Source: Kudoa neothunni
Lineage: Eukaryota; Animalia; Cnidaria
Direction of reading: 5' to 3'
DNA length: 64,000 bases
Assembly: GCA_964304625.1 (NCBI GenBank)
Contig: OZ199840.1
Span: forward strand, 2,778,787 to 2,842,786
Shown in pieces: positions 11,079-62,700 of the stretch; positions within the stretch are counted from its first letter, which is position 1, and each line of letters opens with the position of its first letter. Position numbers and translations under genes: made by a program. Under the pieces are notes generated by a model that had not been told where the DNA came from, searched no databases, and saw nothing but the letters and a program-made list of their open reading frames with translations.

Positions 11079-14000
11079 ATGGTTAAGGATAAATTTTTGA
11101 ATTCCCTCTTATGTATATAGTTTTTTCTTACCATTAATGAATCTTTATTAGGCATGCAAATCGCATTCTTTTGCGTGGTAGAGAATGCAACAGCGCCCGC
11201 TTCAGCCTCAACGTCTACTCCCTTAGCTATTCTAAATTATCAAATTGAATATGATAGTGCTACTTCCTCTAATGTAGTTAAGCATACACTTGGCGGAACA
11301 AGTTATGCTACAGGAAAATGTCGTATATTGAGGTCAAACGAAGCAGAAACTATACTCAACTCAAGTACTCCAGCTGATCTTAAAGAAATTTCAGAATGCC
11401 CTGGACGTGAAACTGCCGAAACCACAAAATGCATAATCGATTGCAATAGCCAAACAAGTAAAGTACCGTATAATAAACTTTCTCCTAGAACAAAATACAT
11501 GTATGTATACGTTGGTGCAGATGAGGCTGTTAAAATAGAGCAATATCCAAGAGGTGGAAAGGTGTTTGGTTTGGCCATACGTAATCTAAATAACTTTGAA
11601 TTGATAAATAATTTAATCAAATTTAGCATTATTGGTCAATCCTCAAGTATCGATCTCTATGGCTGCAGAAAAATTGAAACTCCTAACAAAAACTTGCTCC
11701 CCAGTTGCGTGCCCAATCCATTATAAAGACGCACAATTCAAGGGGGGTAATGCGGGGCAAACATGTGACGCAGAAAACACAGAGAATGATGTTGAATTTG
11801 ATTTATTGATTCCTCATTATGAGATGAGATGTGTGAATTATCCAAGTTTCTTTTATTATATGCCAAATGCATACATGAAGAAAAATATCGCTATTTATGA
11901 ACCTCAGTATTACGTAACAAAAAAGGCGGGAGTTGCTAATCAAGTTGTTCTTAAATTCACTGATTTAATGTTATCATCAGAGATATGTGTTTTCAGTATT
12001 AAGGACGGTAAAACTGAAGTAGCTAACTCCGCGTATGAATCGAAATGTGGAAATACTGAGGGAAAGTGTTACGCACCTTGTAAAAATGTTGAGCTTACTG
12101 TAACAGCAGAAAAAGAAATATATAATGTTCTAATTCAAACCAGGAATCACGATCTTTCAAAAACATCTGTTGATTTTGATGGATTTTCTCAAAAAAAATT
12201 TCGTAATTTATTTTAGTCAATAATTATAATTATTTTATTATAAATCTTATAGCGATATCTGAGACTGGAGATGGTTTATTATCTGTTTATACGAAACAAG
12301 GTTTAACGTTGGATGGGGGATTTTTAAATCCATCATCGGGAACTAAGTTCAATACATGCACTCTAAAACATTATCCTGCTGACAAAGTCAATCCTACATC
12401 TTCAACTACTTCATGTAACGCGGCCACTAAAAAGGATAGTAGTAGTAGTGGTAGTGAGAGTGGTGAATGCAAAACTGGTTGCGAAAAATTAGTAATTGAA
12501 CAACTATCACCAGGGAAACCATATATAATTGAAATTGAGTCCAGTGGCATAGCAGATTTAACTTCCTTCAAAGAACAAATACTTATAAGAACAAGTAATA
12601 ATTTGAAATTAAAAATAAACAAAACTAATAATCATTAAAAGATAATGAGGAGAACAAAAATTTCCAAGAAACTGCCCCTACTAAAACAGAATCAACAACT
12701 ACACTAACAGCTATTGGAGGTGCAGCTGAAGGCAATATGAAAGATCAACCAAATTGTGAATACTATTTAAGTCCAACTGGGAAAAACACATTTTACACCG
12801 CTAAATGTACTGAAACCAATCCCTGTAGAGGAAGATGTAGAGAATCAATAACTATTGTTGATCTTGAACCAAACACTTCTTACGACGTTAGGGTCATTGC
12901 TGATAAGGAGTACAAAGAACACATATATACAAATGTTTTAACTAGTATATATATATATATTAACTTATTCAACTCAATCTAGATCTGGCAACCTTGAGAA
13001 TAACTCAAAAATACACTGAGCAAGGATTGGAATTGAATGCACAATTGTCCAAAAAAGTCCCAGAAGCCATTTGCCATTATACAATCCAAATAAAAAAAGA
13101 TGATGAGTTTGAAGATGTTTACGTCTGCGAAGCATCACAGACACCGGCAGCTGCACCAGAAACTCAAAATACTCCACCAAGCTCACCAGCCGAATCCAAT
13201 TCTAATACCGACCAACCACAAACTGGTACTAGTCAAATTCAAAGTCTAAAATCAGAAATTAATAAATTAAAAATTGCAAGAGCTGAATCTAATACTCCTA
13301 CTGAAACTGAAACTGATACAGATGTCACTCCAATTACGACAGTCGATACAACTGCGAGCCCGGTCAATTCAAACACATGCTCCTCGTTTCCATTGTGCAG
13401 TTCTATTAAATTCGACGACTATGATGCAAATGAAGAGTATAAAGTGTCTATTACTGCAGTGGGAAAATCAGAGAGAAATGAAATTACTTTAGTAGCTAGT
13501 AAAAATATTTTCGATATTATTATTATATTAATATTTAAAATAAATAGCCGCTCCAAAGGGGAATCCCACAGAAAACGACAAAATAATATATGTGACCATA
13601 ACAAGGGATGGTGAATCATTTGTTATAGAAAACACCCTACCATCTAGTCTTAATGAAAAATCCAAATGTAAATGGGAATTACGTAACGCGAGTACCAAAT
13701 CGATAGCAATTATTAAAAAATGCATGAGACGAAATGACAATGGATGTAGAACGTACCCTTCATGCAAATCATTCACTATCAGTGGATTAGCAGATGGCAA
13801 TAATTATCACTTGACTGTGTACAGTTCTATCAATCCAACAATTTATGGGACAGCCACTATTGAGCAAGGTAAAGCATTGTTACTTCGAAAATAATTAAAA
13901 CTGTAAATTTTAGGAGCCAAAAGCAGTTCCAGGTTTATTAATTAATATTTTTAAAATAAATAAATAAATTTTTAGTTCTAAAACCATGGTCATGTATTAA

Positions 14001-14114
14001 TTTATTGTGTTTTTACAATTTAACTGGTATTGTTTTAGAATAATTGCAGTAGCCGCTATTGGAGCTATGATCATGGGTGCTATTGGTTTCGTGGTTTTCA
14101 AGAAGAAAAAATAA
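11079..14114 (+). CDS. Family copy A: Cys-rich FN3-like repeat type-I membrane protein, ~877 aa, 10 exons
   Basis: Exons 11079-11112, 11152-11580, 11627-12202, 12253-12594, 12642-12944, 12983-13498, 13548-13868, 13914-13932, 13976-13993, 14039-14114 splice in frame with GT-AG introns. N-terminus MVKDKFLNSLLCMQIAFFCVVENA is signal-peptide-like; C-terminus MVIIIAVAAIGAMIMGAIGFVVFKKKK*. Confidence 0.9.
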
Positions 14115-14797
14115 ACGCCCTTATTTACGAATTATTGCCCTAAAATCCAACTATAGAAATTTAGATTATTTTTCTAATGGTGTGATATTTATGAAAATTT
14201 TTTAATTTGTCGACAATTAAAATTTATTGATACTTAATCAAATAAAAATATTTTATCTTTGATGTGTTCCAACGTTATTATAAAATTTGATTGGGATGAT
14301 ATGACTCGGATAAAAATGTGGGATTGTTAATAAATTTTAAAATTTTTTTATAATTATTTGAAATTGCTAAAACTTAATGAAATATAATAAACGAATAATA
14401 TTCATTTTGTTAAACGACTTAGTTAAATAAAATATATCTATCGAAAAATAGTTGTAAACGTTGATTAATCTTCCAAATATTTGGATGTTGTATTCGGTTA
14501 CTTTTATAAATTATACACTAAATAACGGTACTGAAATTTATGTGAAATATAAATATCTGAAAAACTAGATAACAAGATATGATTAATATTTTTTTTCTGT
14601 TTATTAAAAAAATGAGCTCAACGGCTTGTGTATTGGCATCTAGGATTTTCAACACTAATCAATGCAAACTCATTTCTTGGGAACTATAATTATGGTTTTA
14701 GTACTTATTCCAGTTTTTAATGAAATCTTGGGCTATTTAAAAGCTAATGTTATGTGGAAAATATTAATAAATAAATTAATTATTGGGTTACTTAACA

Positions 14798-15031
14798 CAG
14801 TGGGTGACCAGTTTTTCGCACTGTCGACTCGTTTGTACTTTCAACAAAAAGTAGATTTATGCTGCATTGTTTTTTTTAAAAAGATATACCATATTTTTTT
14901 ATAATAGAATGTATCAAATTAATAAAACAAATTTTAATTTATATTTGCTATTTTACGTGCTTTTCTTAATGGCCAGTTTTTCGTACATTTTTCAATACTT
15001 GTGGAGGTTACAAACGAGTGGTCACCTACTG
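14798..15031. mobile_element. ~234-bp MITE, Tc1/mariner-pogo type (TA target)
   Basis: TIRs CAGTGGGTGACCA ... TGGTCACCTACTG followed by TA; the twin copy at 58784-59018 is flanked by TA on both sides. Confidence 0.8.
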
Positions 15032-15864
15032 TACTAAAATTATTTTCCAAAAATCCCTTAGAATCATTTTGCATCTACGTTCAAATCTGGATATAGCGTG
15101 GTTATAAAGTTGGACACCGATTTTATAAATTTTTGAATCACTTAAGTTCGTAATCAATTTTACTTTATTTTGCAATAACACATACGGAGGAAAAATGTTT
15201 TCAAGTCTAATGTTCTCCGATATCGAGTTTCCTTCATATGGCGTGACATTTTAAGTTTGGTAACTGGGTTAGCGCGAGTTCGGAATTATCAAGAAAAAGT
15301 TCAGTATTGACGAAAAATGTGAAGCGATAGAATTTTTGTAAATTTATAAAAGTAATCATTTAGGGGAAAACATAAAAACTTTAAAATTTAACGTATACGG
15401 TATATTTATTTCTCTAGCATACTTGAAAATTAATCAAGATTGGCGAATTGTGATTTTCCTGGCAAAAAAAAGTTGCGTTTTGAAAATTTTAAGATTCGGA
15501 TGCTAAAGTGTATAATTTAGGCTCCAAATTAAGACATTTAGATTGATCAATTATTGCTAATGTTATTATGAAAATAGTCGCCTTAACACTGTAGAGTGTG
15601 ATCTTAACAGTCTTGGTACACGTATAGGCTGACTTTGTAGATTAAATATTTTGATCACAAATTTTTCTTTTGCATTAAGAATTTTTTATATTAAATTAAT
15701 ATTAAAATTATATACAATTTGAAATTTATTTTTTTTAAATAAATAAATAATTGACTATAATTTAAAGTCTTTTTAATGCGCCCGCTAAAATATGGGAAAT
15801 GGAAAGTTATTTAAATTAACCGATTCGTACATTGGTTACGCGCAAAAAAAAAGAACACGAAATA

Positions 15865-18205
15865 CAGTATTTCAAAAAACTTGGATGCAACCATGTTGTA
15901 TTAAAATAGATAAATTATAATAAACGCATATAGGTAATAGTTTACTATTTCTTCCATATTTAGACATATTGGGTGGTATGACTTTGCGTGATTAGAATAA
16001 TATTGTAGTTGGACTGATGTTATTTCATTAGGTTCATTAAAGACGGCCTTCCATTTATTCCTCCATTTTTGTGGATGATTGATTTTTTGGTGAAAAATTC
16101 CACGATAAGATTAATCCTTTGGACCCCGAATTTAATTCAGCGACTGAAAAAATTTTGTTTGCTCATTCTGTTAAATTTTAAATAATTCTATATAAAATAT
16201 CCAAAAATTGGAGAAGTCATTTTAAAAATTAAAGATACACAAAAGGTGCCAAATGGTAACATTGGGACGCGGCTTATTTCAATATGCGGGAGTGCGACTG
16301 TGCTTGTTTTTATGTTACTTTGTTTTTAACCAAGAAGTTACTCTTCCACCATCAGAAATGAAATATTAAATTATTCGTTATATTTTTGATAGTCCAAAAA
16401 GCAGTTTCTGTTTTTATTGAGGTACAAAGAAATATTACACTTAATGCAAATATGTTCAAATAAGTGAAATATTCAAATATAATATCTTCAACTTATTCAG
16501 AAATATCAGCTGTTTCAATGCCATTGTTTATTTAATTTTTCGCGTTTATTGTCTAATTTAAGCGGTAGTCATCTTACTCCCCATCATTAGAACTGTATTC
16601 GGATACAATGCCATCATATTGACTACACAAAATGGAATCCGATTCCAGTCCAACGTCTGATTTGTTCCCATCTGGTAACAATATGATTCTTTAAAAGTAT
16701 GCTCTATTCTTTCTTCCCCACTGACCTATTCATTATCCATTCCAAAGAATATAAGCACATTTAAATCAAGGGTCGAACGTTGTCGTGTGACGACGTTCAC
16801 TGTACCCGCTGGCCCAATATTGCCGTGTGGCAACATTGATTAATCTGCCCCTATAGTATTCATACCAAAACATATTTTCATGTTAGATTAATATTTAGAA
16901 TAAACTTATTTAATACTATACTTATATATTTTTTAATTTTACTGAAACCTCAAAATTCCAAGTTCAATTACAGGATACTTTTAGCCTTTTTTTATACTTG
17001 CCGTAGAGTTAGATATTCATCTGTATTTCCCTTGATATAAAACATAAAAAGTTTTGTAATTCATTTATATAAAATCAAATAAACATTAACTATATTATTA
17101 TAATAAAGATAGATTTAAAAATGTAATTACATGGTTAAAACACTCACAAAAGTAAAATGTTTCCATTTGGCAACATAGGGGTTTAAAGGATTAAGGGATG
17201 GTTCATACGAAAGAAGAAACAAAAGTTTGTGGTCTTTTGAATCTAGTTTCCGTCGAATAAGGTCGGTTTTATTGAACCTTACACCGCTCGTAATTAATAG
17301 CTCACTTTGAATTATATAATCAGTAAAATCATTAAGAAGTTTCTCTATTAAAATCTCGAAAAATTGCTGTTTCACAATACCATTTGTCAGCTGAAACGTC
17401 TAAACTTTATCAGAGCAAACATAGGCAACCAATACGATGTTATTAGAGCGAACACTTTTTACTTTCATGTTCAAGTGCGAACCTGAAACCGACCTTCCAA
17501 ATAATGTTCGTCTCATATAAAGCGAGAAGCCAGACTCATCAATGTAAATTACAGGAAAATGGAGTGGTTTAGATTCCAGTTATTTTGGAACTTAATTAAT
17601 AAATATAACATATACCTTTAATTAATTAAAACAATTTTTGCGTTTCGATATGCAATCCTGAGAATTCCACGCAATTGGTACAATTGAAATATTGTTGAGG
17701 GCGTAATGGAACTGGCTCAAAGAGTTATCAATAATATGTCTAGAAACGCCGATATTATGTTCTTGTAGGTTTTTGGCGATTGAATCTAATGTGATTGTGC
17801 AATCTTCATTCACTAAGCTTTGGATATTGTGATTTGTGGACGGTTGTCAATCTTGATCTCCAGTCCCCAGCTCTTCTTAGAAATGCATTCTTCGTCGGCC
17901 GACTTCATCGTCATCCTCGAATTCTTTTAAAAAACCATGAGATCGTTGATTTGAAGACTCCAACCGTTTTTTTTTTCGATTTAAACATGAGTGCAATTTT
18001 CCTTGATATCCTTCAAAATAGTTTAACTAACGCCATACACTTTCGGTAACCTATGATAGTTTGTTTCGTTGTGTCTTCTAAAAAAATATACTTTCTTTTA
18101 GTGACATAAAGCTGTGATGAATTATGATCCGACATGGTTATTTGTAATAACGCGAACCAGTTTAATTTTGATCTGACGTTGTTGCATTTAGGTCTTGAAA
18201 TATTG
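15865..18205 (-). mobile_element. Decayed IS630/Tc1-family transposon, interrupted by a piggyBac derivative
   Basis: TA-flanked imperfect TIRs CAGTATTTCAAAAAACTTGGATGCAAC / GTTGCATTTAGGTCTTGAAATATTG; minus-strand remnants VNEDCTITLDSIA (HTH), PVIYIDESGF (first catalytic D) and LLSYEPSLN|LIVEFF (PYSPxLNPIE motif split by the insertion). Confidence 0.82.
16115..17190 (-). mobile_element. Non-autonomous piggyBac derivative inserted at TTAA inside the Tc1 transposase
   Basis: TTAA on both sides (16111-14, 17191-94), TIRs TCCTTTGGACCCC / GGGGTTTAAAGGA; the twin copy retains a piggyBac C-terminal Cys-rich remnant CIKCNVHFCLNKNRKCF. Confidence 0.8.
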
Positions 18206-21501: not shown

Positions 21502-21505
21502 TTAA

Positions 21506-21780: not shown

Positions 21781-23752
21781 ATATGTAACCAAACTTTAGA
21801 ATATTATATAATTAATAAATTGTTTTTTTATTTCAAATTTTTTGCTTTATTTTTGCTGCAATATTAACTTTCACACACGGCTTGAATAGGATGCCGAATA
21901 ATAAATTTAACTTTTGATCGTACGTCCGGCGAGATTTCGCCAGACAAGAGTTATCTGCGTTTTAAGCTATGGTAGGTCATTTGAATACTAAATAAAGAAA
22001 TTGGAATTACTTTTCTACAACAGAAACTGCTAAAAATATACATACAGGGAAGGTTTGCATCCATCTTAACCTTGTTCCATGGAATGATTTTAATAGATAT
22101 ATAATTAATTTTCTGTCAATCTGTAAAAACTCTAATGTTAAATTTATAACCATTTTACAAAATATAATCATAATTAAAGATTAATAATTTTTTTCACAAC
22201 GGAGTAATTTACTAAAAACAAACACATTCAAAAAAAATATGTAAATTTTATTTGACATTTTTATATTTATTATACGCAGAAAAGTTAATTTAAAAATAAA
22301 TTTTTGTTCAATATTTAAATTAAGGTAAAAAAGGAAACCCTCATAAACGATAAGAAAAGTTTATATTAATGCCTACATTAGATGACGTGATGTTTAACAT
22401 AAGATATGGTGGTGCAAATTTTGAGTTTAAATATAAACTGATAAATATTCATATCTGAAAGTCAGAAAGAATTATCTCAATCAATTTTGGATCAATTGTA
22501 ATTTCAAATAAATCAACATGGTATTAGAATAGTAAATATAGTTTTGTATTGTCTAATTTTAGGGAATTTTAGAATGAGCGGCTTTTAACTCATTCAAAAA
22601 TTGGAATTTACTCTTAAAATGTATCATTTTATTATCAAGTGAAAATTTAAGTTCTTTAGCTTATAAAGTTAGCAATACATGAATTCTCAAATTTGAGAAT
22701 TAATTAATTTAGGAAATATCTTTAATAACTATAAAATTAGTTTAAGCTGCAAATGATGGTAAACTTTAAAAAAATAGTTTAAGTTAATGATTATAATATT
22801 TTTCAAATAAATAACCTAATTTACCAATGAATCAAATCTTGTTTTTTGATTTCTGTTTTAGGTCGGAAATAATTATATTAACTTTTAGGAAAGATCAATT
22901 AATTTACTTTGAAAAACATTTTGTTTTATTGGCTAAATATTATATTTAGCTCGAATTTTTTATATGAAGTCCAAAAATCTCTTGTTAAAATATCCGAATG
23001 ATGGAATATTTTAAGTTATTTTCTTGTATTAGATTTCACGAGTATTTTTGTGTAATCTCACTTATATAATTTTAAGTGAAATATCCAAAATTAAAATTTA
23101 AAGGATTGATTTTGTATTACATTTTGTAAGGTTAAGAAGAGTTTAATAAAGACACATTATTGTACGATGCTGATTTATGAATTTCGGTTATTTAACGTTA
23201 CGTAAATAACTTCATTTTTAACCAAAAAATCGTTTTTCTATTTTTTATGTTGAAAAGTTATTGTTATTATGTTAATTTATAAAATTTCTTAATAGGAATT
23301 ATCTTCGTATTATCACCAATATCTATTTGAGTGTGGTAGAGATAATAAAGATTGATTTCTAATATGTATAAAAAATGTAATAATACAAATATCTGATCTA
23401 TTTTGTAATGAAATTCAATAGAAAATTGATATAGATAAAAATGGCTTCAAATTCTAAAGAATCCATCATACGTCATCAGGTAAACCTTGGATTTCATGGT
23501 AATCTTAATAAAATGAAATCCACTCTTATGATTTTCATATTTTGTATCTCGTATTATTAAAATTTCTAAATTAATAATTAGGTTGTATTTTAATAATAAA
23601 AAAATATAAACTAATCAGAAAATTAAAATCAATGAAGAATTGGATTAATAAATCAATTGTCTTTTAGATAGGCTATTTACCCGATACGAGTATCGACTTA
23701 TTATAGTATTCATTTATTCAGTATTATTGGTTGTTTCGTTTTACCTTTCATT

Positions 23753-26700
23753 ATGGTTAAGTATAAATTTTTGAATTGCCTCTTATGTATATAGTGTTTT
23801 ATTACCGATAATGAGTCTTTATTAGTCATTCAAATCGCATTTCTTTGTACGATGGAAAATGCAACGGCGCCCTCTTCTCCATCAATGTCTACTCCATTAG
23901 CTACGCTGAATTATCAAATTGAATATGATAGTTCTACTACCTCCAATTTAGTTAAGCATACACTTGGTGGAACACATTATGCTACAGGAAAATGTCGTAT
24001 ATTGAAGTCAAACGAAGCAGCAAACATGGGTGGTTCGACAACAGCAGCGGCGTATCAAGAAATATCAAGCTGCCCTGGATATATTACCGATAGTAGTAAC
24101 ACAAACTGTGTAATTTCTTGTGACAGTCAGAATAACAAAGTTCCATATAATAAACTTTCACCACGGACAAAATATATATACGTATATGATAATAATGATT
24201 TCGACACTGCTAAAGCAGATTATCCTAAAGGTGGAAAAGTGTTTGGTTTGGCCACACGTAATCCAAGTATCTTTAAAGCAATAAATTATATCATAAAATT
24301 TAGCATTATTGGTCAATCCTCAAGTAACAATCTCTACCAATGCTGATAGATTGAAACTCCTAACAAAAACTTGCTCCCCAGTTGCGTGCCCAATCCATTA
24401 TAAAGACGCACAATTCAAGGGGGGTATTGCGGGGCAAACATGCGATACAGGAAGCACAGAGAATGATGTTGAATTTGACCTATTGATTCCTCATTATGAG
24501 ATGAGATGTGTGAATTATCCAAGTTTCTTTTATTATATGCCAAATGCATACATGAAGAAAAATATGGCTATTTATGAACCTCAGTATTACGTAACAAAAA
24601 AGGAGGGAGCTGCTAATCAAGTTATTCTTAAATTCACAGATTTAATGTTATCGTCAGAGATATGCGTTTTCAGTATTAAGGACGGTAAAACTGGTGCAGC
24701 TAACTCCGCGTATGAATCGAAATGTGGAAATACTGCGGGAAAGTGTTACGCACCTTGTAAAAATGTTGAGCTTACTGTAACAGCAGAAAAAGAAATATAT
24801 AATGTTCTAATTCAAACCAGGAATCACGATCTTTCAAAAACATCTGCTGATTTTGATGGATTTTCCCAAAATAAATTTCGTAATTTATTTTAGTCAATAA
24901 TTATAATTATTTTATTATAAATCTTATAGCGATATATGAGACTGGTGATGGTTTGTTGTCTGCTTATACCAAAAATGGTGTATCTTTTGATGGTACATTA
25001 TTAAACCCCTCTGCAAGTACAGGTACCAAGTTTTCTACGTGCACGTTAAAGCATTACCCTGCTGACAAAGTCAAACACACGCCTTCAACTACTTCATGTA
25101 ACGCGGCCACTAAAAAGAATAGTAGTAGTAGCAGTAGTAGTAGTAGTAGCAGCAGCAGTAGCAGTAGCAGCAGTAGCAGTAGCAGCAGTAGCAGTAGCAG
25201 CAGTAGCAGTAGTAGCAGTGGCAGCAGTAGCAGTAGTAGTAGTAGTAGTGAGGGTGGTGAATGCAAAACTGGTTGCGAAAAATTAGTAATTGAAGGACTA
25301 TCTCCAGGGAAACCATATATTATCGAAATTGAACCTAATGGAATCGCAGATCCAGCTTCTTTCAAAGAACAAATACTTATAAGGACAAGTAATAACTAAA
25401 AATTTAATATTAACTTAACTAATAATATTTACAAGATAATGAGGTGAATAAAAATTTTCAAGCAACCGCCCCTACTAAAACAGAATCAACAACTACACTA
25501 ACAGCTATTGGAGGCGAAGCAGAGACAAATAAAAATAATGAGCCAAACTGTGAATACTATTTAAGTCCAACTGGGAAAAACACATTTTACACCGCTAAAT
25601 GTACTGAAACCAATCCCTGCAGAGGGAGATGTAGAGAATCAATAACTATTGTTGATCTTGAACCAAACACTTCTTACGACGTTAGGGTCATTGCTGATAA
25701 GGAGTACAAAGAACACATATATACAAATGTTTTAACTAGTATATATATATATATATATATATATTAATTTATTCAACTCAATCTAGATCTGGCAACCTTG
25801 AGAATAACTCAAAAATACACTGAACAAGGATTGGAATTGAATGCACAATTGTCCAAAAAAGTCCCAGAAGCCATTTGCCATTATACAATCCAAATAAAAA
25901 CAGATGAAAGGTTTGAAGATGTTTACGTCTGCGAAGCATCACAGACACCAGCAGCTGCGCCAGAAACTCAAAATACTCCACCAAGCTCACCAGTCGACTC
26001 CAATTCTAATCCCGAGCAAGAACAAACTGGTACTAGTCAAATTCAAAGTCTAAAATCAGAAGTTAATGGATTAAAAATTGCAAGAGCTGAATCTAATACC
26101 CCTACTGAAACTGATACAAATGTTGCCCCAGCTACAACAGTCGATACAACTGCGAGCCCGGCCAATACAAATACATGCTCCTCATTTCCATTGTGCAGTT
26201 CTATTAAATTCAACGACTATGATGCAAATGAAGAGTATAAAGTGTCTATTACTGCAGTGGGAAAATCAGAGCGAAATGAAATTACTTTAGTAGCTAGTAA
26301 AAATATTTTCAATATTATTATTATATTTAAAATAAATAGCTGCTCCAAAGGGGAATCCAACAGAAAACGACAAAATAATATATGTGACCATAACAAGGGA
26401 TGGTGAATCATTTGTTATAGAAAACACCCTACCATCTAGTCTCAATGAAAAATCCAAATGTAAGTGGGAATTACGTAACGCGAGTACCAAATCGATAGCA
26501 ATTATTAAAAAATGCATGAGACGAAATGACAATGGATGTAGAACGTACCCTTCATGCAAATCATTCACTATCAGTGGATTAGCAGATGGCAACAATTATC
26601 ACTTGACTGTGTACAGTTCCACCGATAAAACAGTTTATGGGACGGCTACGATTGAGCAAGGTAAAGCATTATTACTTCGAAAATAATTTAAATTGTAACT

Positions 26701-26908
26701 TTTTAGGAGCCAAAAGCAGTTCAAGGTTTATTAATTAATATTTTTAACATAAATAAATTTTACATTTAGTTCTAAAACCATGGTCATGTATTAATTTATT
26801 GTGTTTTTACAATTTAACTGGTATTGTTTTAGAATAATTGCAGTAGCCGCTATTGGAGCTATGATCATGGGTGCTATTGGTTTCGTGGTTTTCAAGAAGA
26901 AAAAATAA
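23753..26908 (+). CDS. Family copy B, 10 exons, apparently intact, with poly-Ser expansion
   Basis: Same exon/intron structure as A; start MVKYKFLNCLLFIQIAFLCTMENA; ends GFVVFKKKK* at 26908. Confidence 0.9.
25121..25249 (+). repeat. (AGT/AGC)n coding microsatellite, ~43 codons of poly-Ser with one Gly
   Basis: Directly visible; copy A has only SSSSGS at the homologous site. Confidence 0.97.
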
Positions 26909-42808: not shown

Positions 42809-45800
42809 TTATTTTTTCTTCTTGAAAACCACGAAACCAATAGCACCCATGATCATAGCTCCAATAGTCGCCACTGCAATTATTCTAAAACAATATTAGT
42901 TAAATTGTAGGAACATAATAAAGTAATACATGACCATGGTTTTAGAACTAAATGAAAAATTTATTTATTTTAAAAATATTAATTAATAAACCTTGAACTG
43001 CTTTTGGCTCCTAAAAGTTACAGTTTTAATTATTTTCGAAGTAATAATGTTTTACCTTGCTCAATAGTGGCAGTCCCATAAATTGTTGGATTGATAGAAC
43101 TGTACACAGTCAAGTGATAATTGTTGCCATCTGCTAATCCACTGATAGTGAATGATTTGCATGAAGGGTACGTTCTACACCCATTGTCATTTCGTCTCAT
43201 GCATTTTTTAATAATTGCAATCGATTTTGTACTCGCGTTACGTAATTCCCACTTACATTTGGATTTTTCATTAAGACTAGATGGTAGGGTGTTTTCTATA
43301 ACAAATGATTCACCATCCCTTGTTATGGTCACATATATTATTTTGTCGTTTTCTGTGGGATTCCCCTTTGGAGCAGCTATTTATTTTAAATATAATAATA
43401 ATATCGAAAATATTTTTACTAGCTACTAAAGTAATTTCATTTCTCTCTGATTTTCCCACTGCAGTAATAGACACTTTATACTCTTCATTTGCATCATAGT
43501 CGTTGAATTTAATAGAACTGCACAATGGAAATGAGGAGCATGTGTTTGTATTGGCCGAGCTCGCAGTTGTATCGACTGTCGTAGTTGGAGTGACATCTGT
43601 ATCAGTTTCAGTTTGAGTAATAGATTCAGCTCTTGCAATTTTTAATTCATTAATTTCTGATTTTAGACTTTGAATTTTACTGGTACTAGTTGGTTGTTGG
43701 TCGGGGTTAGAATTGGAGTCGGCTGGTGAGCTTGGTGGAGTATTTTGAGTTTCTGGCACAGCTGCCGTGTCTGTGATGCTTCGCAGACGTAAACATCTTC
43801 AAACCTCTCATCTTTTTTTATTTGGATAGTATAATGGCAAATGGCTTCTGGGACTTTTTTGGACAATTGTGCATTTAATTCCAATCCTTGTTCAGTGTAT
43901 TTTTGAGTTATTCTCAAGGTTGCCAGATCTAGATTGAGTTGAATAAGTTAATATTTTGATATATATACTCGTCGTAACATTTTCATATATGTGTTCCTTG
44001 TAATCCTTATCAGCAATGACCTTAACGTCGTAAGAAGTATTTGGTTCAAGATCAACAATAGTTATTGATTCTCTACATCTTCCTCTACAGGGATTGGTTT
44101 CAGTACATTTAGCGGTGTAAAATGTATTTTTCCCAGTTGGACTTATGTAATACTCACAGTTTGGCTCATCTTTCTTATCAGTTCTTGCCGTATCTCCAAT
44201 AGCTGTTAGTATAGTTGTTGATTCTGTTTTAGTAGGGGCGGCTGCTTGAAAACTTTTATTATCCTCATTATCTTGTAAATATTATTAGTTAAGTTAATAT
44301 TAAATTATTAGTTATTACTTGTTCTTATAAGTATTTTTTCTTTGAAGGAAGCTGGATCTGTTATACCAGATTCAATTTCGATGATGTATGGTTTCCCTGC
44401 AGACAGCCCTTCAATTACTAGTTTTTCGCAACCAGTTTTGCATTCGGCGCCGCTGCCATTATCAGTCTTTTTAGTGGCCGTGCTACATTTAGTGATTGAT
44501 GCAGCGTGTTTAATTTTGTCAGCAGAGTAGTGCTTGAGCGTACAGGTAGAAAATGTGGTCCCAGACCCTTGTTTTAAAAATGTTCCGTCAAAAGATACAC
44601 CTTGCTTGGTATAATCTGACAATAATACGTTTTCAGTCTCGGATATTGCTAAATAATTTATAAGTTAACACCGAATTAAATAAATTACGAAATTTATTTT
44701 GAGAAAACCCATCTAATTCACTAATAGAAATTTTTGAAAGATCGTGATTTCTGGTTTGAATTAGAACATTATATATTTCTTTTTCTGCAGTTAGAGTAAG
44801 CTCAACGTCTTTGCATGGTGCGTAACACTTTCCTGCAGTATTTCCACACTTTGATTCAAAGGCATCACCCGATGCTGCACTTTTAGCGTCCTTAATACCA
44901 AAAACACAAATCTCAGACGATAATGATAAATCTGTGAATTTAAGACCAACTTGATTAGGAGCTCCTGTCTTTTTAATCACATAATACTGAGGCTCGTAAA
45001 TGGCCATGTTATCCTTCATATATACATTTGGCATATTATAGAAAAAGCTTGGATAATTCACACATCTTATTTCGTAATGAGGAACCAATAAGTCAAATTC
45101 AACGTCGTTATCTCTGTTGTCCTCGTCACATGTTCCTCCAGCGGTACCCGCCTTGAATTGTGCGTCTTTGTAATGGATGGGACATGCAACTGGAGGGCAA
45201 GTTTTTGATAGTAGTTTCAATTTTTGGTCATTTTTAGAGATTTTAACCTGAGGATTTACCAATAATGCTAATTTAAATAACTAAAATTATTTATTTAAAG
45301 TTAATTAGATTACGTATTGCCAAACCAAACACTTTTCCACCTTTTGGATAAGTCGCCACATTAGCAGCGTTCTCTTCAGTATTATCATATACATATATAT
45401 ATTTTGTTCGTGGGGTAAGTTTATCATAAGGAACTTTACTACCTTGACTATTGCATGCAATTACGCATTTGTTATTATTATTGGTAACATATCCAGGGCA
45501 CTCAGTTATTTCTCCATACGCGGCTGCTTCTGTCGATCCACCCACGTTTGCTGCTGTATTGGATATCAGTATACGACACTTTTTTCCATCGCCATAGCTT
45601 GATCCGACAAGTATATGTTTTACTTTATTTGATTTACTGTCATTATCGTATTCAATTAGGTATTTGAGTGTGGCTGTGGGAGTAGAAGTAGCTGTAGATT
45701 CAGGCACTGTTGCATTTTTAATCATACAAAAGAATGCGATTTGAATGACTAATAAAAATTCATGATTGATAATAAGAAAATAAATACATAAGAGGCAATG

Positions 45801-45821
45801 CAAAAATTTATCCATAGTCAT
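42809..45821 (-). CDS. Family copy C; apparent 1-bp deletion frameshift in exon 6 (pseudogene or sequencing error)
   Basis: Same 10-exon layout; GCTGCCGTGTCTG at ~43765 versus GCTGCCGGTGTCTG in D and E splits the exon-6 ORF (43663..43917 / 43310..43759). Confidence 0.82.
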
Positions 45822-50420: not shown

Positions 50421-50566
50421 AAATATTAAATCATATTTTTTGATTTGAACATTTAATAATTTGAATTATTGATAAATAAAAGCGTGGTTAAAAATATTGG
50501 AGCATAAATTAAATAATCGAAATTTCTCTAACTAGATAGTAGGGAAAAATTCGTATATATGAGCGT

Positions 50567-53500
50567 TTATTTTTTCTTCTTGAAAACCACGAATCCAATA
50601 GCACCCATGATCAAAGCTCCAATAGCCGCTACTGCAATGATTCTAAAACAATATCAGTTAAATTATAAAAAAACAATAAATTAATACATGACCATGGTTT
50701 TAGAACTAAATACAAAATTTATTTATGTTAAAAATATTAATTAATAAACCTTGAACTGCTTTTGGCTCCTAAAAGTTACAATTTAAATTATTTTCGAAGT
50801 AATAATGCTTTACCTTGCTCAATAGTGGCAGTCCCATAAATTGTTGGATTGATAGAACTGTACACAGTCAAGTGATAATTGTTGCCATCTGCTAATCCAC
50901 TGATAGTGAATGATTTGCATGAAGGATACGTTCTACACCCATTGTCATTTCGTCTCATGCATTTTTTAATAATTGCAATCGATTTTGTACTCGCGTTACG
51001 TAATTCCCACTTACATTTGGATTTTTCATTAAGACTAGATGGTAGGGTGTTTTCTATAACAAATGATTCACCATCCCTTGTTATGGTCACATATATTATT
51101 TTGTCGTTTTCTGTGGGATTCCCCTTTGGAGCAGCTATTTATTTTAAATATAATAATAATATCGAAAATATTTTTACTAGCTACTAAAGTAATTTCATTT
51201 CTCTCTGATTTTCCCACTGCAGTAATAGACACTTTATACTCTTCATTTGCATCATAGTCGTTGAATTTAATAGAACTGCACAATGGAAATGAGGAGCATG
51301 TGTTTGAATTGACCGGGCTCGCAGTTGTATCAACTGTTGTAGCTGGGGCAACATTTGTGTCAGTTTCTGTTTGAGTAATAGATTCAGCTCTTGCAATTTT
51401 TAATTCATTAATTTCTGATTTTAGACTTCGAACTTGACTAGTACCAGTTTGTGGTTGTTCGGGATTAGGACTGGATTCGGCTGGTGAGCTTGGTGGAGTA
51501 TTCTGAGTTTCTGGCACAGCTGCCGGTGTCTGTGATGCTTCGCAGACGTAAATATTTTCAAACCTTTCATCTTTTTTTATTTGGATAGTATAATGGCAAA
51601 TGGCTTCTGGGACTTTTTTGGACAATTGTGCATTTAATTCTAATCCTTGTTCAGTGTATTTTTGAGTTATTTTCAAGGTTGCCAGATCTAGATTGAGTCA
51701 ATAAGTTAACTTTTTGAGAAATATACTCGTCGTAACATTTTCATATATGTGTTCCTTGTAATCCTTATCAGAAATGACCTTAACGTCGTAAGAAGTATTT
51801 GGTTCAAGATCAACAATAGTTATTGATTCTCTACATCTTCCTCTACAGGGGTTAGTTTCAGTACATTTAGCGGTGTAAAATGTATTTTTCCCGGCTGGAC
51901 TTATATAATACTCACAGTTTGGTTCATCTTTCTTATCAGTTTCTGCCGTACCTCCAATAGCTGTTAGTATAGTTGTTGATTCAGTTTTAGTAGGGGCGGT
52001 TGCTTGAAAATTTTTGTCATCATTTTTCTCTTTGAAAATTATTAGTTATTGAGAGTTATTTTTCAGTTATTACCTGTCCTTATAAGTATTTGTTCTTTGA
52101 AAGAAGCTGGATCTGCGATTCCATTAGGTTCAATTTCGATAATATATGGTTTTCCCGGAGATAGTCCTCTAATTTCTACTTTCGTGCAATCATTTTTACA
52201 AACTTCAGGTTCATTCTCCCCGTTATTCTTCTTGCAATTCGTTTCATTGGAAGTAGTTGGCTTAATTGTATCAGCAGCATAATGCTTTATAGTACAAATA
52301 GTGCTAGATGTTCCTGACGTCGGTTTAAACAGGACAGTATCTAATTTTACACCCTCCTTTGTGAAATCGGACAATAAACCACCTCCAGTTTCAGATATAG
52401 CTAAAAATTTCTAATAAAATAATTTTTGGTTAAAATAAATTACGAAATTTATTTTGGGAAAATCCATCAAAATCAGCAGATGTTTTTGAAAGATCGTGAT
52501 TCCTGGTTTGAATTAGAATCTTATATATTTCTTTTTCTGTAGTTACAGCAAGCTCAACATTTTTACAAGGTGTATAACATTGTCCCGCAGTATTTCCACA
52601 CTTCGATTCGTACGCGGTGCTAGCTGCTGAATTTTTACCGTCCTTAATACTGAAAACGCAAATTTCAGATGATAATGATAAATCTGTGAACTTAAGGCGA
52701 ACTTGCTTATCGGATCCTGCCTTTTTTGTTACGTAATACTGAGGTTCATAAATAGCGATATTTTTCTTCATATATGCATTTGGCATATAATAAAAGAAAC
52801 TTGGATAATTCAAGCATCTCATCTCATAATGAGGGATAAATAAGCTAAAATCTACAATATTCGCATTGGAATTTGTCACACATGAATCTCCTTTTGAACC
52901 AACCGCGAATTTGGCGTCTTTGTAGAAAATAGGACAATCAACCTGTGAGCAAGTCTTATGTACGAACTTCAGTTTTTCAGCATTCGTAGAGATTATTACT
53001 TGAGGATTGACCAATAATGCTAAATAAAACGGATAAATTTATTCGATATTAATTATTTTTCTTACGTATTGCCAAACCGAACACTTTTCCACCTTTAGGA
53101 TAATCTGCTTTAGCAGTGTCGAAATCATTATTATCATATACGTATATATATTTTGTCCTTGGAGAGAGTTTATCATATGGAACTTTGCTATTCTGACTGT
53201 CACAAGAAATTACACAGTTTGTGTTACTACTATCAGTAATATATCCCGGGCAGCTTGATATTTCTTGATACGCCGCTGCTGTTGTCGAACCACCCATGTT
53301 TGCTGCTTCGTTTGACTTCAATATACGACATTTTCCTGTAGCATAATGTGTTCCACCAAGTGTATGCTTAACTAAATTGGAGGTAGTAGAACTATCATAT
53401 TCAATTTGATAATTCAGCGTAGCTAATGGAGTAGACATTGATGGAGAAGAGGGCGCCGTTGCATTTTCCATCGTACAAAGAAATGCGATTTGAATGACTA

Positions 53501-53570
53501 ATAAAGACTCATTATCGGTAATAAAACACTATATACATAAGAGGCAATTCAAAAATTTATACTTAACCAT
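50567..53570 (-). CDS. Family copy D, 10 exons, apparently intact
   Basis: ORFs 53049..53471, 52430..53014, 52063..52374, 51068..51676, 50788..51090 plus micro-exons and a terminal IIAVAAIGALIMGAIGFVVFKKKK*. Confidence 0.9.
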
Positions 53571-54485
53571 AATGAAAGATAAAGCAAATCAACAAATAGA
53601 ATTTAATAAATGAATACTCTAATAAGCCGATACTTGTATCGGGTAAATAGCCTATCTAAAAAACGATTGATATAATAATCTAATTCTTAATATATTGTAA
53701 TTTTCTGATTAATATATATTTACTTTGTTATTAAAATACAGCTTAATTATTAATTTAAAAATTTTAATAATACCAGATACAAAATATGAACATCATATGA
53801 GTGGATTTCATTGGATTAAGATTACCATGAAATCTAAGATTTAACTAGTGAAGTATGATGAATTATTTAGAATTTATAACTATTTTTCATCTTTATTAAT
53901 CTTCTCTTAAATTACATTACAGAATTGGGCAGATATTTGTAAAATTACATTTTTTCTACATATTATTAGAAATCAAACTTTATTTTCTCTACGACATTCT
54001 TTTATTAACCCTCCGGAGCACGCGTTGGGTCTTTTAGACCCCACGTGATTCTAATATTGCTATAACATTTTTTTAACTTAAAGCTAACGACTAGTAATTA
54101 ATCCTATTCGCATATTTTTTGACGAACATTACGTTGATTTAAAAGATCGAAGTGGCTGTATCTCAGGTACTTGATAATCCGGTCGGCCTCAGGCTATATC
54201 TCTAAAACTACTCAATATTGTTTTTCCATATTCCACATATCATCTAATGTTTATCTAACATAATTTTTTGTATATTTCTGAAAAATTAAAAAAAATTATT
54301 TTTTCCTTGTGTGACCATACACAGTCCAACAGCAGCTGGGTACGATTCTTTATTTTTTTAACATAATTTCATCAATTAACATCATTATACACAAAATGTA
54401 GAAATAATAATAAATTTCTGAGTTATCTATAACTTGGGTGCGCAATTTTTCTTTCTAATTAGCGTGGCACGGAATGAGTTCAAAT

Positions 54486-57904: not shown

Positions 57905-58783
57905 TATTTCGTGTTCTTTTTTTGTGCGCGTAACCAATGTACGAATCGGTTAATTTAAATAACTTTTCATTTCCCATATTTTAGCGGGCGCATTAAAAAG
58001 ACTTTAAATTATGGTCAATTATTTATTTATTTAAAAAAATAAATTTCAAATTGTATATAATTTTAATATTAATTTAATATAAAAAATTCTTAATGCAAAA
58101 GAAAAATTTGTGATCAAAATATTTAATCTACAAAGTCAGCCTATACGTGTACCAAGACTGTTAAGATCACATTCTAATGTGTTAAGGCGACAATTTTCAT
58201 AATAACATAAGCAATAATTGATCAACTTAAATTCCTTAATTTGGAACCTCAATTATACACTATAGCATTCGAAACCTTAAAATATTCAAAACTCAACTCT
58301 CTTTTTTTTGGGGGAAAATCGCAATTCGCCAATCTTGATTAATTTTCAAGTATAGCATCCAACGACAAATGACTTTTTCATTCTTATAAATATTCTAGAA
58401 AAATAAAATATACCGTATACGTTAAATTTTAAAGTTTTTGTGTTTTTCCCTATAACATATAAATTTACAAAAATTCTATTGCCTCACATTTTTCGTCAAT
58501 ACTGAATAGTTCCTTGATAATTCCGAACCCTCGCTAACCCAGTCACCAAACATAAAATGCCACGCCATATGAAGGAAACTCGATATCGGAGAACATTAGA
58601 CTTGAAAACATTTTTAAACATTTTTCCTCCGTATGTGTTATTGCAAAAAAAGTAAAATTAACTACGAACTTTGGTGAGTCTAAAATTTATAAAATCGAGG
58701 TCAAAATTTATAATCACGTTATATCCAATTTTGAACGTAGATGCAAAATGATTTTAGGGGACTTTTTGAAAATAATTTTAGTA

Positions 58784-59018
58784 CAGTAGGTGACCACTCG
58801 TTTGTAATCTCCACGAGTATTGAAAAATGTACGAAAAATTGGTCATTAAGAAAAGCACGTAAAAATAGCAAATGTAAATTAAAATTCGTTTTATTAACTT
58901 GATACATTCCATTATAAAAAAATACGGTATATCTTTTTAAAAAAATTAATGCAGCATAAATCTACTTTTTGTTGAAAGTACAAACGAGTCGACAGTGCGA
59001 AAAACTGGTCACCCACTG
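58784..59018. mobile_element. Second copy of the ~234-bp TA-flanked MITE
   Basis: TA-CAGTAGGTGACCA ... TGGTCACCCACTG-TA. Confidence 0.82.
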
Positions 59019-59694
59019 TACTAAGTATTCCTATAATTAATAAAATTTTTTGGAATTTTTAATTCAATTTAGATTTTTAAATAGTCCAAAGTTTCGTTGG
59101 AAACTGGAATAAATGTTAAAACCACAATTATAGTTCCCAAGAAATGAGCTTGCATTGATTAGAATGCTGAAAATCTTAGATACCAATGTAAAAGCCATTA
59201 AGCTCATTTTTAATAAACATCAGATCATTCATCACATCTCGTTATCTAATTTTTATAATATTAATATTTCATATGAATTTCAGTATCGTTATTTAGTTTA
59301 TAATTTATAAAAGTAACTGAATACAACATCTAAATATTTAGGAGGTTAATCAATGTTTACAACTATTATTCGATAAATATATTCAATTTAATATAATTAA
59401 TTCGTTTAACAAAATAAATATTATGCGTATATCATATTTCATTATGTTTTAGCAATTTCTAATAATTATAAAAAAATTTTAAAAGTTTATTAACAATCAT
59501 ACATTTTTATCCGAGTCATATCATCCCTATCAAGTTTTATAATAACGTTGGAACACATCTAAGATAAAATATTTTTATTTTATTAAGTATCAATAAATTT
59601 TAATTATCGACAATTCATAAATATCACATCATTAGTTAAAAAATATAACTTTCTATAGTTAGATTTTAGGGTAATAATTCGTAAATAAGGGCGT

Positions 59695-62600
59695 TTATTT
59701 TTTCTTCTTGAAAACCACGAAACCAATAGCACCCATGATCATAGCTCCAATAGCGGCTACTGCAATTATTCTAAAACAATACCAGTTAAATTGTAAGAAC
59801 ACAATAAATTAATACATGACCATGGTTTTAGAACTAAATACAAAATTTATTTATGTTAAAAATATTAATTAATAAACCTTGAACTGCTTTTGGCTCCTAA
59901 AAGTTACAATTTAAATTATTTTCGAAGTAATAATGCTTTACCTTGCTCAATAGTGGCAGTCCCATAAATTGTTGGATTGATAGAACTGTACACAGTCAAG
60001 TGATAATTGTTGCCATCTGCTAATCCACTGATAGTGAATGATTTGCATGAAGGGTACGTTCTACACCCATTGTCATTTCGTCTCATGCATTTTTTAATAA
60101 TTGCTATCGATTTTGTACTCGCGTTACGTAATTCCCACTTACATTGGATTTTTCATTAAGACTAGATGGTAGGGTGTTTTCTATAACAAATGATTCACCA
60201 TCCCTTGTTATGGTCACATATATTATTTTGTCGTTTTCTGTGGGATTCCCCTTTGGAGCAGCTATTTATTTTAAATATAATAATAATATCGAAAATATTT
60301 TTACTAGCTACTAAAGTAATTTCATTTCGCTCTGATTTTCCCACTGCAATAATAGACACTTTATACTCTTCATTTGCATCATAGTCGTTGAATTTAATAG
60401 AACTGCACAATGGAAATGAGGAGCATGTGTTTGTATTGGCCGGGCTCGCAGTTGTATCGACTGTCGTAATTGGAGTGACATCTGTATCAGTTTCAGTTTG
60501 GGTATTAGATTCAGATCGTGCAATTTTTAATTCATTAATTTCTGATTTTAGACTTTTACTTTGAATAATGTCAGTTTGTTCTTGGTCGGGATTAGGACTG
60601 GATTCGGCTGGTGAGCTTGGTGGAGTATTTTGAGTTTCTGGCGCAGCTGCCGGTGTCTGTGATGCTTCGCAGACGTAAACATCTTCAAACCTTTCATCTT
60701 TTTTTATTTGGATTGTATAATGACAAATGGCTTCTGGGACTTTTTTGGACAATTGTGCATTTAATTCTAATCCTTGTTCAGTGTATTTTTGAGTTATTTT
60801 CAAGGTTGCCAGATCTAGATTGAGTTGAATAAGTTAATATTTTGATATATATACTCGTCGTAACATTTTCATATATGTGTTCCTTGTAATCCTTATCAGA
60901 AATGACCTTAACGTCGTAAGAAGTGTTTGGTTCAAGACCAACAATAGTTATTGATTCTCTACATCTTCCTCTACAGGGATTGGTTTCAGCACATTTAGCG
61001 GTGTAAAATGTATTCTTCCCAACTGGACTTACGTAGTATTCACAGTTTGGTTCTTCATTTTTATTTTCCTTTGCGTCGCCTCCAATAGCTGTGAGTGTAG
61101 TTGTTGATTCAGTTTTAGTAGGGGCGGTTGCTTGAAAATTTTTGTCATCATTTTTCTCTTTGAAAATTATTAGTTATTGAGAGTTATTTTTCAGTTATTA
61201 CCTGTCCTTATAAGTATTTGTTCGTTTAAAGTAGTTGGATTGCTGCCACCAGTTAATGCGATTTCAAGAATATAAGGTTTTCCTGCAGTTAATTCTTCAA
61301 TTACTAATTTTTCGCAGCTAGTTTTACAATTATTATTACTACTTCTGTAATTTGCGCCACATTGAGTGATAGATGGATCTTTTTTAATATTGTCAGCTGG
61401 GTAATGTTTTAAAGTGCAACCAGTAAACTGTGTGCCTGACCCTGGCTTAAAAACTGCTGCGTCAAAAGATACACCTTTATTGGTATAATCGGACAATAAA
61501 CCGTTTCCAGTCTCCAATATCGCTAATTATTAAATATATAATCGTATCAAATTTAATATGATACCAAATTTTTTTTGAGAAAATCCATCTAAATCACCAA
61601 TAGAAGTCTTTGAAAGGTCGTGATGTCTGGTTTGGATTAAGACGCTGTAAACATCTTTTGTTGCAGTCAGAGTAAGCTCAACATCTTTGCATGGTGCGTA
61701 ACATTTTCCATCCTGATTTCCACAGTTTGATTCGAATTGTTTGCTATTTCCTGCAGATGTACCATCTTTAATACCAAAAACACAGATCTCAGATGATAAC
61801 GTTAAATCTGTGAATTTAAGACCAACTTGATTAGGAGCTCCTGTCTTTTTAGTCACATAATACTGAGGCTCATAAATGGCCATGTTATCCTTCATATATG
61901 CATTTGGCATATTATAGAAAAAGCTTGGATAATTCCCACATCTTATTTCGTAATGAGGAACCAATAAGTCAAATTCAACGTCATTATTTGTGTTGTCCTC
62001 ATCACATGTTGTTCCTACGTTACCCCCCTTGAATTGTGCGTCTTTATAGTGAATAGGGCACACAACTGGAGGACAAGTTTTAGTCAAGAGTATTAGTTTT
62101 TTGCTCCCATCAACAGATATTTTTGCTTGTGGATTTACCAACAACGCTAAATTTAAAGATGATTTATCGAATAAAAATTATTTAAATTACGTATGGCCAA
62201 ACCAAATACTTTTCCGCCTTTGGGATATGTGCCCTCTTTGACAATGGTCTCATTAATATTATCATATACATATATGTATTTTGTTCGCGGGGTGAGTTTA
62301 TTATATGTTACTTTACTAGCTTGACTATTGCAATCTATCACGCATTTAGTGTTACTATTAGTACTATCGTACCCGGGACAGTTTTCGATTTCTTCTAAGC
62401 CAGCTGCTGACGTTGAACCGAAACTGTTTGCGGATGCGTTGGATATCAATATACGACACTTTTTTCCATCGCCATAACTTGATCCGTCAAGTATATGTTT
62501 CACTTTATTAGATTTGCTCTCATCATCGTACTCAATTTGGTATTTGAGTGTAGCTGTGGGAGTAGAAGTAGCTGTAGATTTAGGCACTGTTGCATTTTTA

Positions 62601-62700
62601 ATCATACAAAAGAATGCGATTTGCATGACTATAAAAATTCATGATTGATAATAAAAAAATAGATACATAAGAGGCAAAGCAAAAATTTATCTTTAACCAT
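59695..62700 (-). CDS. Family copy E; apparent 1-bp deletion frameshift in exon 7 (pseudogene or sequencing error)
   Basis: Same layout; start MVKDKFLLCLLFMQIAFFCMIKNA; TTACATTGGA at ~60144 versus TTACATTTGGA in C and D, and the 100-aa exon-7 ORF is missing from the track. Confidence 0.82.

What the first reader, a model, noticed from the sequence alone, without database searches (positions are those of the whole stretch)
11152..62626. Patchwork (mosaic) relationships among copies indicate segmental exchange
The nearest neighbour changes by segment. Exon 2: B and D are almost identical (about 3 aa differences); C and E share the first ~60 aa, then C resembles B (AANVGGSTEAAAY vs AANMGGSTTAAAY). 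Exon 3: A~B and C~E, while D has a unique first third (FVHKTCSQVDCPIFYKD). End of exon 4: B=D (EPNGIADPASF). Intron 4: B~C and D=E. End of exon 5: A=B (EYKEHIYTNVLT) versus C=D=E (DYKEHIYENVTT). End of exon 7: B alone has STDKTVY. No single tree fits, which implies gene conversion or recombination that generates combinatorial diversity, including between opposite-strand copies ~30 kb apart.
Basis: seen in the sequence. Interest (0 to 1): 0.88.

Follow-up and report, generated by a model that had tools for sequence, protein, structure and literature searches.

The report
Mosaic surface-protein genes of fish parasite
Five copies of an apparently undescribed membrane-protein gene, part of a family of at least 150 copies in a fish-parasitic cnidarian (probably Kudoa neothunni), have traded short stretches of DNA with each other, so each copy is a patchwork, which makes the family a candidate for how these parasites vary their surface.

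Summary
The mosaic is real. Five intact-looking 10-exon paralogs (A, B on +; C, D, E on -) encode a signal peptide, six exons of 4-Cys FN3-like modules, a membrane helix and a KKKK tail. Every segment claim checks out. Per-segment trees reject each other, and identical tracts (median ~100 nt) exceed permutation nulls. The 499-nt B=D tract between opposite-strand copies 29 kb apart has unrelated flanks on both sides, and short-read contigs of one sample branch exactly at both ends, so it is not a long-read chimera. Tracts mostly end inside exons, so this is not exon shuffling. Best reading: recurrent ectopic gene conversion plus unequal crossover. It homogenises the membrane-proximal half (dS ~0.1-0.2) and reshuffles old variants in the distal half (dS ~0.6); overall dN/dS is 0.2-0.4. 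The family has at least 150 (likely 300-500) members on all three chromosomes and no named homologue. The organism is inferred to be Kudoa neothunni. Antigenic variation is plausible but untested: no RNA data, and every copy keeps its own first exon. The scan noted the same pattern at other clusters of this genome.

The parts
11079..14113 (+). Copy A: 10 exons (11079-11112, 11152-11580, 11627-12202, 12253-12594, 12642-12944, 12983-13498, 13548-13868, 13914-13932, 13976-13993, 14039-stop), 877 aa, open
   Evidence: All introns GT-AG, 38-50 nt; exons 2-7 are phase 1 to phase 1
23753..26907 (+). Copy B, open; long poly-Ser microsatellite in exon 4 (~25120-25240)
42810..45821 (-). Copy C; 1-nt deletion in exon 6 at ~43767 (in a 2-base run; true break or consensus error not resolved)
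50568..53570 (-). Copy D, open; several D-specific stretches confirmed without differences in short-read contigs
59696..62700 (-). Copy E; 1-nt deletion in exon 7 at ~60145 (in a 3-base run; true break or consensus error not resolved)
23745..24243 (+). B side of the 499-nt B=D tract (8 nt before ATG to near the end of exon 2), 492/499 identical
53080..53578 (-). D side of the B=D tract; upstream of it D is mostly closer to A than to B, downstream D-specific; a short-read contig starts and ends at exactly these two positions
51983..52092 (-). D side of the D=E tract over the end of exon 4, intron 4 and the start of exon 5 (E: 61111-61220)
   Evidence: 31 consecutive polymorphic sites, null 99% = 10; top-ranked
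61111..61220 (-). E side of the D=E tract
11674..12169 (+). A side of the A~B exon 3 block (B: 24351-24846), 93-98% identical
25315..25384 (+). B side of the B=D tract at the end of exon 4 (D: 52078-52147)
   Evidence: 27 consecutive polymorphic sites
52856..52976 (-). First third of D exon 3: related to the cluster at C3:5.0 Mb (83%) rather than to neighbours (57-62%); older long-range exchange or retained ancestral patch
11008..11021 (+). 14-nt palindrome ~60-70 nt upstream of the ATG; also at 23682, 45879, 53628, 62758, one per copy: every copy keeps its own upstream element and exon 1
   Evidence: 5 matches versus 0.05 expected; the exact matches genome-wide (about 15 sites) lie at positions just upstream of copies of this subfamily
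14039..14113 (+). Exon 10: hydrophobic helix and four-lysine tail, nearly invariant in all five
   Evidence: peak 19-residue hydropathy 2.6

Best explanation
A-E are members of a large, lineage-specific family of single-pass membrane proteins built from 4-cysteine FN3-like modules. Because the copies share long homology, recombinational repair sometimes uses a paralog as template and overwrites a stretch of about 50-500 nt (ectopic gene conversion), in either orientation and across tens of kb; unequal crossover changes copy number in the array. Shown: patchwork ancestry, tract sizes, ends inside exons, both ends of one tract in independent reads, the 5'-to-3' gradient. Inferred: conversion as the molecular route (a tract with two ends between inverted copies fits conversion better than single crossover, which would invert the interval between B and D). 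Inferred with less support: the proteins sit on the parasite surface, and the distal loops stay diverse because host recognition favours a varied repertoire, while the stalk and anchor are homogenised.
For: Permutation tests (PHI-like 0.34 versus 0.495 +/- 0.007; incompatibility rises from 0.31 under 25 nt to 0.55 over 800 nt). AU tests: among 19 copies each of 7 segments rejects the other six trees (p <= 0.0034). 68 globally significant identical tracts in 50 pairs, median 98 nt; 128 of 136 ends lie in exons. B=D tract bounded on both sides and matched by contig ends at 53080 and 53578. Same slot, different gene: a second block at C3:34-67 kb is 99-100% identical to window 10637-42200, yet its copy at the C position is a different mosaic, 91.7% identical. 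dS 0.61-0.68 in exons 2-4, 0.09-0.21 in exons 6-10; introns follow. Amino-acid variation clusters in loops between conserved Cys strands. At least 150 copies.
Against: No donor direction could be fixed. Overall dN/dS 0.2-0.43; pN exceeds pS in only a few 12-codon windows. No RNA run holds the gene. A KKxx-type tail can also mean ER retrieval (own knowledge). Fold models are low confidence (pLDDT 52 and 61). Only copy D was laid on reads, and all four runs come from one sample.
Confidence: 0.8

Rival explanations
1. Dedicated antigenic-variation system: one or few copies are expressed at a time and conversion from the other copies rebuilds the expressed coat during an infection, as in trypanosome VSG, Babesia ves or Pneumocystis msg.
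For: Hundreds of copies, signal peptide plus anchor, variable distal loops on a constant stalk, mosaic at a 100-nt scale, a shared upstream palindrome; antigenic variation is reported for myxozoans with unknown mechanism (bioRxiv 10.64898/2026.02.11.705288).
Against: Every copy has its own upstream element and exon 1, so no promoter-less archive or single expression site is visible; this cluster lies 2.8 Mb inside an 11-Mb chromosome; no overall positive selection; Kudoa spore-forming stages develop inside muscle cells (PMC8481699). No expression evidence.
Confidence: 0.3
2. Neutral by-product: ordinary concerted and birth-and-death evolution of a tandem family; the patchwork has no selected role and the family serves adhesion, nutrient binding or self/stage recognition.
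For: Synonymous sites and introns show the same gradient as replacement sites; purifying selection overall; some copies look broken; any large homologous array converts (established knowledge). Not exclusive with the best explanation's mechanism, only with its adaptive step.
Against: Deep variants (dS ~0.6) persist in the distal exons although exchange there is frequent; family size is extreme for a genome with 5,316 predicted genes (PMC12239612).
Confidence: 0.4
3. Exon (domain) shuffling: symmetric phase-1 exons are swapped whole between copies.
For: Exons 2-7 are all phase 1 to phase 1.
Against: Only 8 of 136 tract ends lie in introns (6%, versus 9% of polymorphic sites); median tract is a third of an exon or less. 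Module order is the same in all 30 loci examined and in a distant homologue.
Confidence: 0.05
4. Assembly artefact: low-coverage consensus mixes reads from paralogs, haplotypes or co-infecting genotypes.
For: The likely source assembly was built from ~7x HiFi reads by a meta-assembler (PMC12239612); the duplicate of A carries 27 small indels in 4.2 kb; a 200-N gap lies 3.6 kb past the window end.
Against: Tracts are far shorter than HiFi reads; A and B are assembled twice with the same mosaic; short-read contigs confirm D-specific stretches with zero differences and branch exactly at both ends of the B=D tract.
Confidence: 0.05

Closest known systems
Mosaic variant-surface-antigen families (Pneumocystis msg, PMC10622565; Babesia ves, PMC7485966; trypanosome VSG)
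   Same: Large paralogous surface family, segmental mosaics, variable outer part on a conserved anchor.
   Different: Animal parasite; FN3-like modules in intron-rich genes; each copy has its own first exon and upstream element; clusters all along chromosomes; exclusive expression and switching untested.
Hydractinia Alr allorecognition family (PMC9546547, PMC3276163)
   Same: [quoted passage not shown]
   Different: Alr has V- and I-set Ig domains, one FN3-like fold, and tails that often carry ITAM/ITIM motifs; here ~7 four-Cys modules, a four-lysine tail and several times more copies. No sequence link found.
Variant-specific surface proteins (VSP) of diplomonads and Sphaerospora molnari (bioRxiv 10.64898/2026.02.11.705288)
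   Same: Signal peptide, large ectodomain, one TM helix, short basic tail.
   Different: VSPs have >10% Cys and >5 CxC/CxxC motifs; this protein has 3.5% Cys and none.
Sea urchin Sp185/333 (SpTransformer) cluster (PMC5103432, seen)
   Same: Invertebrate clustered family with near-identical segmental duplicates and an unstable array.
   Different: Host immune effector family; no shared sequence or domain tested.

Membership tests
Ectopic (interlocus) gene conversion in a multigene family | Segments have conflicting trees | tested here: met
   AU tests
Ectopic (interlocus) gene conversion in a multigene family | Identical tracts longer than column permutation allows | tested here: met
Ectopic (interlocus) gene conversion in a multigene family | Tract bounded on both sides by non-donor sequence | tested here: met
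   B=D 499 nt, D=E ~110-130 nt
Ectopic (interlocus) gene conversion in a multigene family | Non-reciprocal transfer with known donor and recipient | tested here: inconclusive
   One genome, no outgroup haplotypes; direction not fixed
Antigenic-variation systems (VSG/ves/msg type) | Large family with surface-protein anatomy and variable distal part | tested here: met
   (surface location predicted, not observed)
Antigenic-variation systems (VSG/ves/msg type) | Silent archive lacking promoter or leader, feeding an expression site | tested here: not met
   All five copies keep exon 1 and the upstream palindrome; the wider family was not checked
Antigenic-variation systems (VSG/ves/msg type) | Mutually exclusive expression and switching | not testable with these tools
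   No RNA run holds the gene
Antigenic-variation systems (VSG/ves/msg type) | Diversifying selection on exposed sites | tested here: inconclusive
   dN/dS 0.2-0.43 per exon; pN>pS in few loop windows
Diplomonad / S. molnari VSP | >10% Cys and >5 CxC or CxxC motifs | tested here: not met
   3.5% Cys, zero motifs (definition)
Diplomonad / S. molnari VSP | Single TM helix with short basic tail | tested here: met
Hydractinia Alr | Cytoplasmic tail, often with ITAM/ITIM | tested here: not met
   Tail is four lysines, no tyrosine
Hydractinia Alr | [quoted passage not shown] | tested here: inconclusive
   Low-confidence models of exons 2 and 3 match FN3-type receptor domains best; no Alr model compared directly
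Fibronectin type III domain (PF00041) | Reaches the Pfam gathering score, or FN3 beta-sandwich fold | tested here: inconclusive
   Exon 5: 19 bits versus cut-off 25, 12 of 17 members at E<0.01; NCAM2 FN3 at E 0.001; exon 3 model best hit IFNAR1 E 5.8e-4; exon 2 Z 6.3, rmsd 3.9 over 101 residues

The most novel reading that the evidence does not exclude
Kudoa and related myxozoans carry a recombination-driven variant surface coat: several hundred FN3-like genes, missed by annotation, that are shuffled by gene conversion and expressed one or a few at a time, a protist-style antigenic-variation system evolved in an animal parasite.
Probability: 0.27. Interest if true: 0.87.

Novelty: new member of a known kind. 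Interest (0 to 1): 0.62.

Why it matters
The mechanism (conversion among paralogs) is textbook; the family appears not to be described. It has at least 150 and probably 300-500 copies in a 40-Mb genome credited with ~5,300 genes, no named homologue among 1.84 billion representatives, and distant relatives with the same module order in other samples. Myxozoans damage farmed and wild fish and their antigenic variation has no known molecular basis, so this gives a concrete, testable candidate. It also matters for vaccine design: the homogenised membrane-proximal exons 6-7 are the constant part, the distal loops the variable part.

Tried and rejected
Sphaerospora molnari as source: same size but 40 contigs and 7 chromosomes, rejected in favour of K. 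neothunni. XPD search to name the organism gave only ~49% hits. Word-based homolog search with exon 3 found nothing; Atlas feature and fold searches gave only weak rows. The weak Pfam neuraminidase hit on exon 2 (19 bits, cut-off 27) is treated as chance. Profile-profile comparison between exons 2, 3 and 5 found no significant similarity, so the shared module rests on Cys spacing and weak fold matches. The organisms behind the distant homologues could not be named; the SNF5 neighbour test was inconclusive. All database searches were done exon by exon, by reference; the joined spliced model was never searched or folded (it was translated once in a script, only to check splice phases of copy A). 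C and E were translated as they stand, without repair.
Full report
1. What is there. A self-comparison of the window finds five ~3.2-kb copies at 80-92% identity: A and B on +, C, D and E on -. Alignment and exon projection give one 10-exon model with GT-AG introns of 38-50 nt in A and the same splice sites in all five. Copy A reads 877 aa: a likely signal peptide split over exons 1-2, six exons (2-7) that are all phase 1 to phase 1 and carry four-cysteine modules (exon 3 carries two), two micro-exons of 19 and 18 nt, and a last exon with a hydrophobic helix and four lysines before the stop. C and E each lack one base in a short run (about 43767 and 60145); whether these are true breaks or consensus errors is open.

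2. All seven segment claims are in the translations. Among the five copies, adjacent informative sites share a split 112 times against 50.4 +/- 5.8 in 20,000 permutations, and B/D agree at 130 consecutive polymorphic sites against a 99% null of 19. With 19 copies from the genome, each of seven segments rejects the trees of the other six (AU p <= 0.0034; with five copies alone many but not all contrasts are significant). Site incompatibility rises with distance from 0.31 to 0.55, and a PHI-like statistic is 0.34 against 0.495 +/- 0.007.

3. Shape of the exchange. In exons 2-5 there are 68 globally significant identical tracts among 50 pairs, median 98 nt, quartiles 78-130; 128 of 136 ends lie inside exons, so whole-exon swapping is not the mode (tracts are not independent events). 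The clearest case is B 23745-24243 against D 53578-53080: 492 of 499 identical, opposite strands, 29 kb apart, with D mostly closer to A than to B upstream and D-specific downstream. A tract with two ends between inverted copies fits conversion better than a single crossover (inference). D's 'unique' exon 3 start is 83% identical to a cluster 2.2 Mb away and 57-62% to its neighbours, while exon 6 of D is 93-94% to neighbours and 75% to that cluster: older long-range exchange, or an ancestral patch that escaped overwriting.

4. Not an assembly chimera, at least at D. Short-read contigs from four runs of one 2021 sample were laid on 50300-54300. D-specific stretches are matched without differences (52123-52460, 52640-52748, 52783-53109, 53632-54201). 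One contig runs from 53080 to 53578, the exact ends of the B=D tract, at about twice the depth of the unique pieces, and its seven differences are the seven B alleles; the contig 52783-53109 joins the last 30 nt of the shared tract to D's own continuation. A and B are also assembled a second time with the same mosaic. The D=E tract and copies C and E were not confirmed in reads.

5. A natural comparison. Window 10637 to about 43000 recurs at C3:34.3-66.7 kb at 99-100% identity, including a gamma-tubulin-complex gene. The flank is nearly identical up to about 42200, then the copy in the C slot is a different mosaic (91.7%) and is followed by nine more copies instead of D and E. The block starts with many single-base indels and the window's own contig ends in a 200-N gap 3.6 kb past the window. 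I read it as the second haplotype placed at the chromosome end (about 60%) or a recent duplication (about 40%); either way the same slot holds different mosaics, and tracts are shared freely between the two arrays.

6. What the exchange does. Among 15 close copies dS is 0.64, 0.61 and 0.68 in exons 2-4, 0.29 in exon 5 and 0.09-0.21 in exons 6, 7 and 10; introns fall from 0.22-0.33 to 0.03-0.12. So the membrane-proximal half is homogenised and the distal half keeps old variants that are recombined. dN/dS is 0.20-0.43 per exon; variable residues cluster in loops, and pN passes pS only in a few windows of exons 4, 6 and 7. Selection for diversity is therefore suggested by the layout but not shown.

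7. The family and the organism. The genome is 40.26 Mb in four contigs, three of them over 11 Mb. This fits Kudoa neothunni, a myxozoan from tuna muscle: 40.2 Mb, three chromosomes, GC 30.4%, introns ~49 nt, ~7x HiFi, 5,316 predicted genes, few parasite RNA reads (PMC12239612). The name is an inference (about 85%). That paper does not mention a surface family, and three literature searches found no description. A profile of exon 3 finds only 15 proteins among 1.84 billion representatives, all unnamed Logan or ENA contigs, from at least five samples with GC 0.17-0.39; one keeps the order of exons 2-6 at 32-43% identity. Their hosts could not be named; myxozoan origin is a guess. The fold is FN3-like on weak but concordant evidence, below Pfam's cut-off.

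8. Mechanism. Shown: patchwork ancestry, sub-exon tracts, exchange across strands, homogenised stalk, variable tip, very large family. Inferred: ectopic gene conversion with unequal crossover (0.8). Function: a surface repertoire facing the host is the most likely role, but a dedicated switching system is only 0.3, because each copy keeps its own exon 1 and upstream palindrome, the cluster is internal, and no RNA run holds the gene. A neutral by-product of a large adhesion or recognition family is about as likely for the adaptive question (0.4). The KKKK end could also act as an ER-retrieval signal (own knowledge).

9. Comparison. It works like the mosaic archives of Pneumocystis msg, Babesia ves and trypanosome VSG, and like sequence donation among Hydractinia Alr loci (PMC3276163), but it fails membership tests for VSP (3.5% Cys, no CxxC) and for Alr (no signalling tail), and shows no promoter-less archive in the five copies.

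10. Verdict. Observation confirmed; mechanism known; family apparently new and unusually large. First-stage notes record the same patchwork at other clusters of this genome, which widens the scope but is not independent support. Searches were run exon by exon by reference; the joined model was left out of all searches and folds. Interest 0.62.

Noticed in passing
window 10637-43000 versus G000:C3:34323-66715: A 32-kb block recurs at 99-100% identity near the start of the same chromosome, with an indel-rich start; probable unpurged second haplotype or very recent duplication.
   Followed up: partly
window ~25120-25240 (copy B exon 4): AGT/AGC microsatellite encoding a ~40-residue serine run; the duplicate copy is 15 nt shorter, so it varies by slippage.
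   Followed up: partly
window 11008, 23682, 45879, 53628, 62758: 14-nt palindrome upstream of every copy; exact matches genome-wide (about 15 sites) fall only at this subfamily, so other subfamilies use another or a diverged element.
   Followed up: partly
window 1210-3317: Formin (FH2, E 2.7e-41) whose proline-rich region starts with a Gly-Pro-Gly-Gly tandem repeat.
   Followed up: no
window 6750-9406: XPD/ERCC2 helicase gene directly upstream of copy A; single copy, not part of the duplicated block.
   Followed up: partly
window ~33000-37200 (-): Gamma-tubulin complex component gene (PF04130) sits inside the array between B and C.
   Followed up: no
L031:3644-3843, L022:1301-1500, L039:9042-9241: 200-N scaffold gaps; one lies 3.6 kb past the window, so the array may continue, and one cuts the copy at C3:116 kb.
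   Followed up: partly
window 55204-59600 versus 14200-18546; C3:174-179 kb versus window 18866-23500: Long flanks, including repeat remnants, are shared between oppositely oriented end copies, pointing to inverted duplication at the origin of the array.
   Followed up: no
L047:169-1026: In one distant homologue exons 2 and 3 read as one open frame, suggesting that intron is absent there.
   Followed up: no
G000:C3:183-460 kb, C1:16.3-16.9 Mb, C2:9.8-10.9 Mb, C2:7.9-8.2 Mb: Dense clusters of more distant family members (48-60% identity), some near chromosome ends.
   Followed up: no
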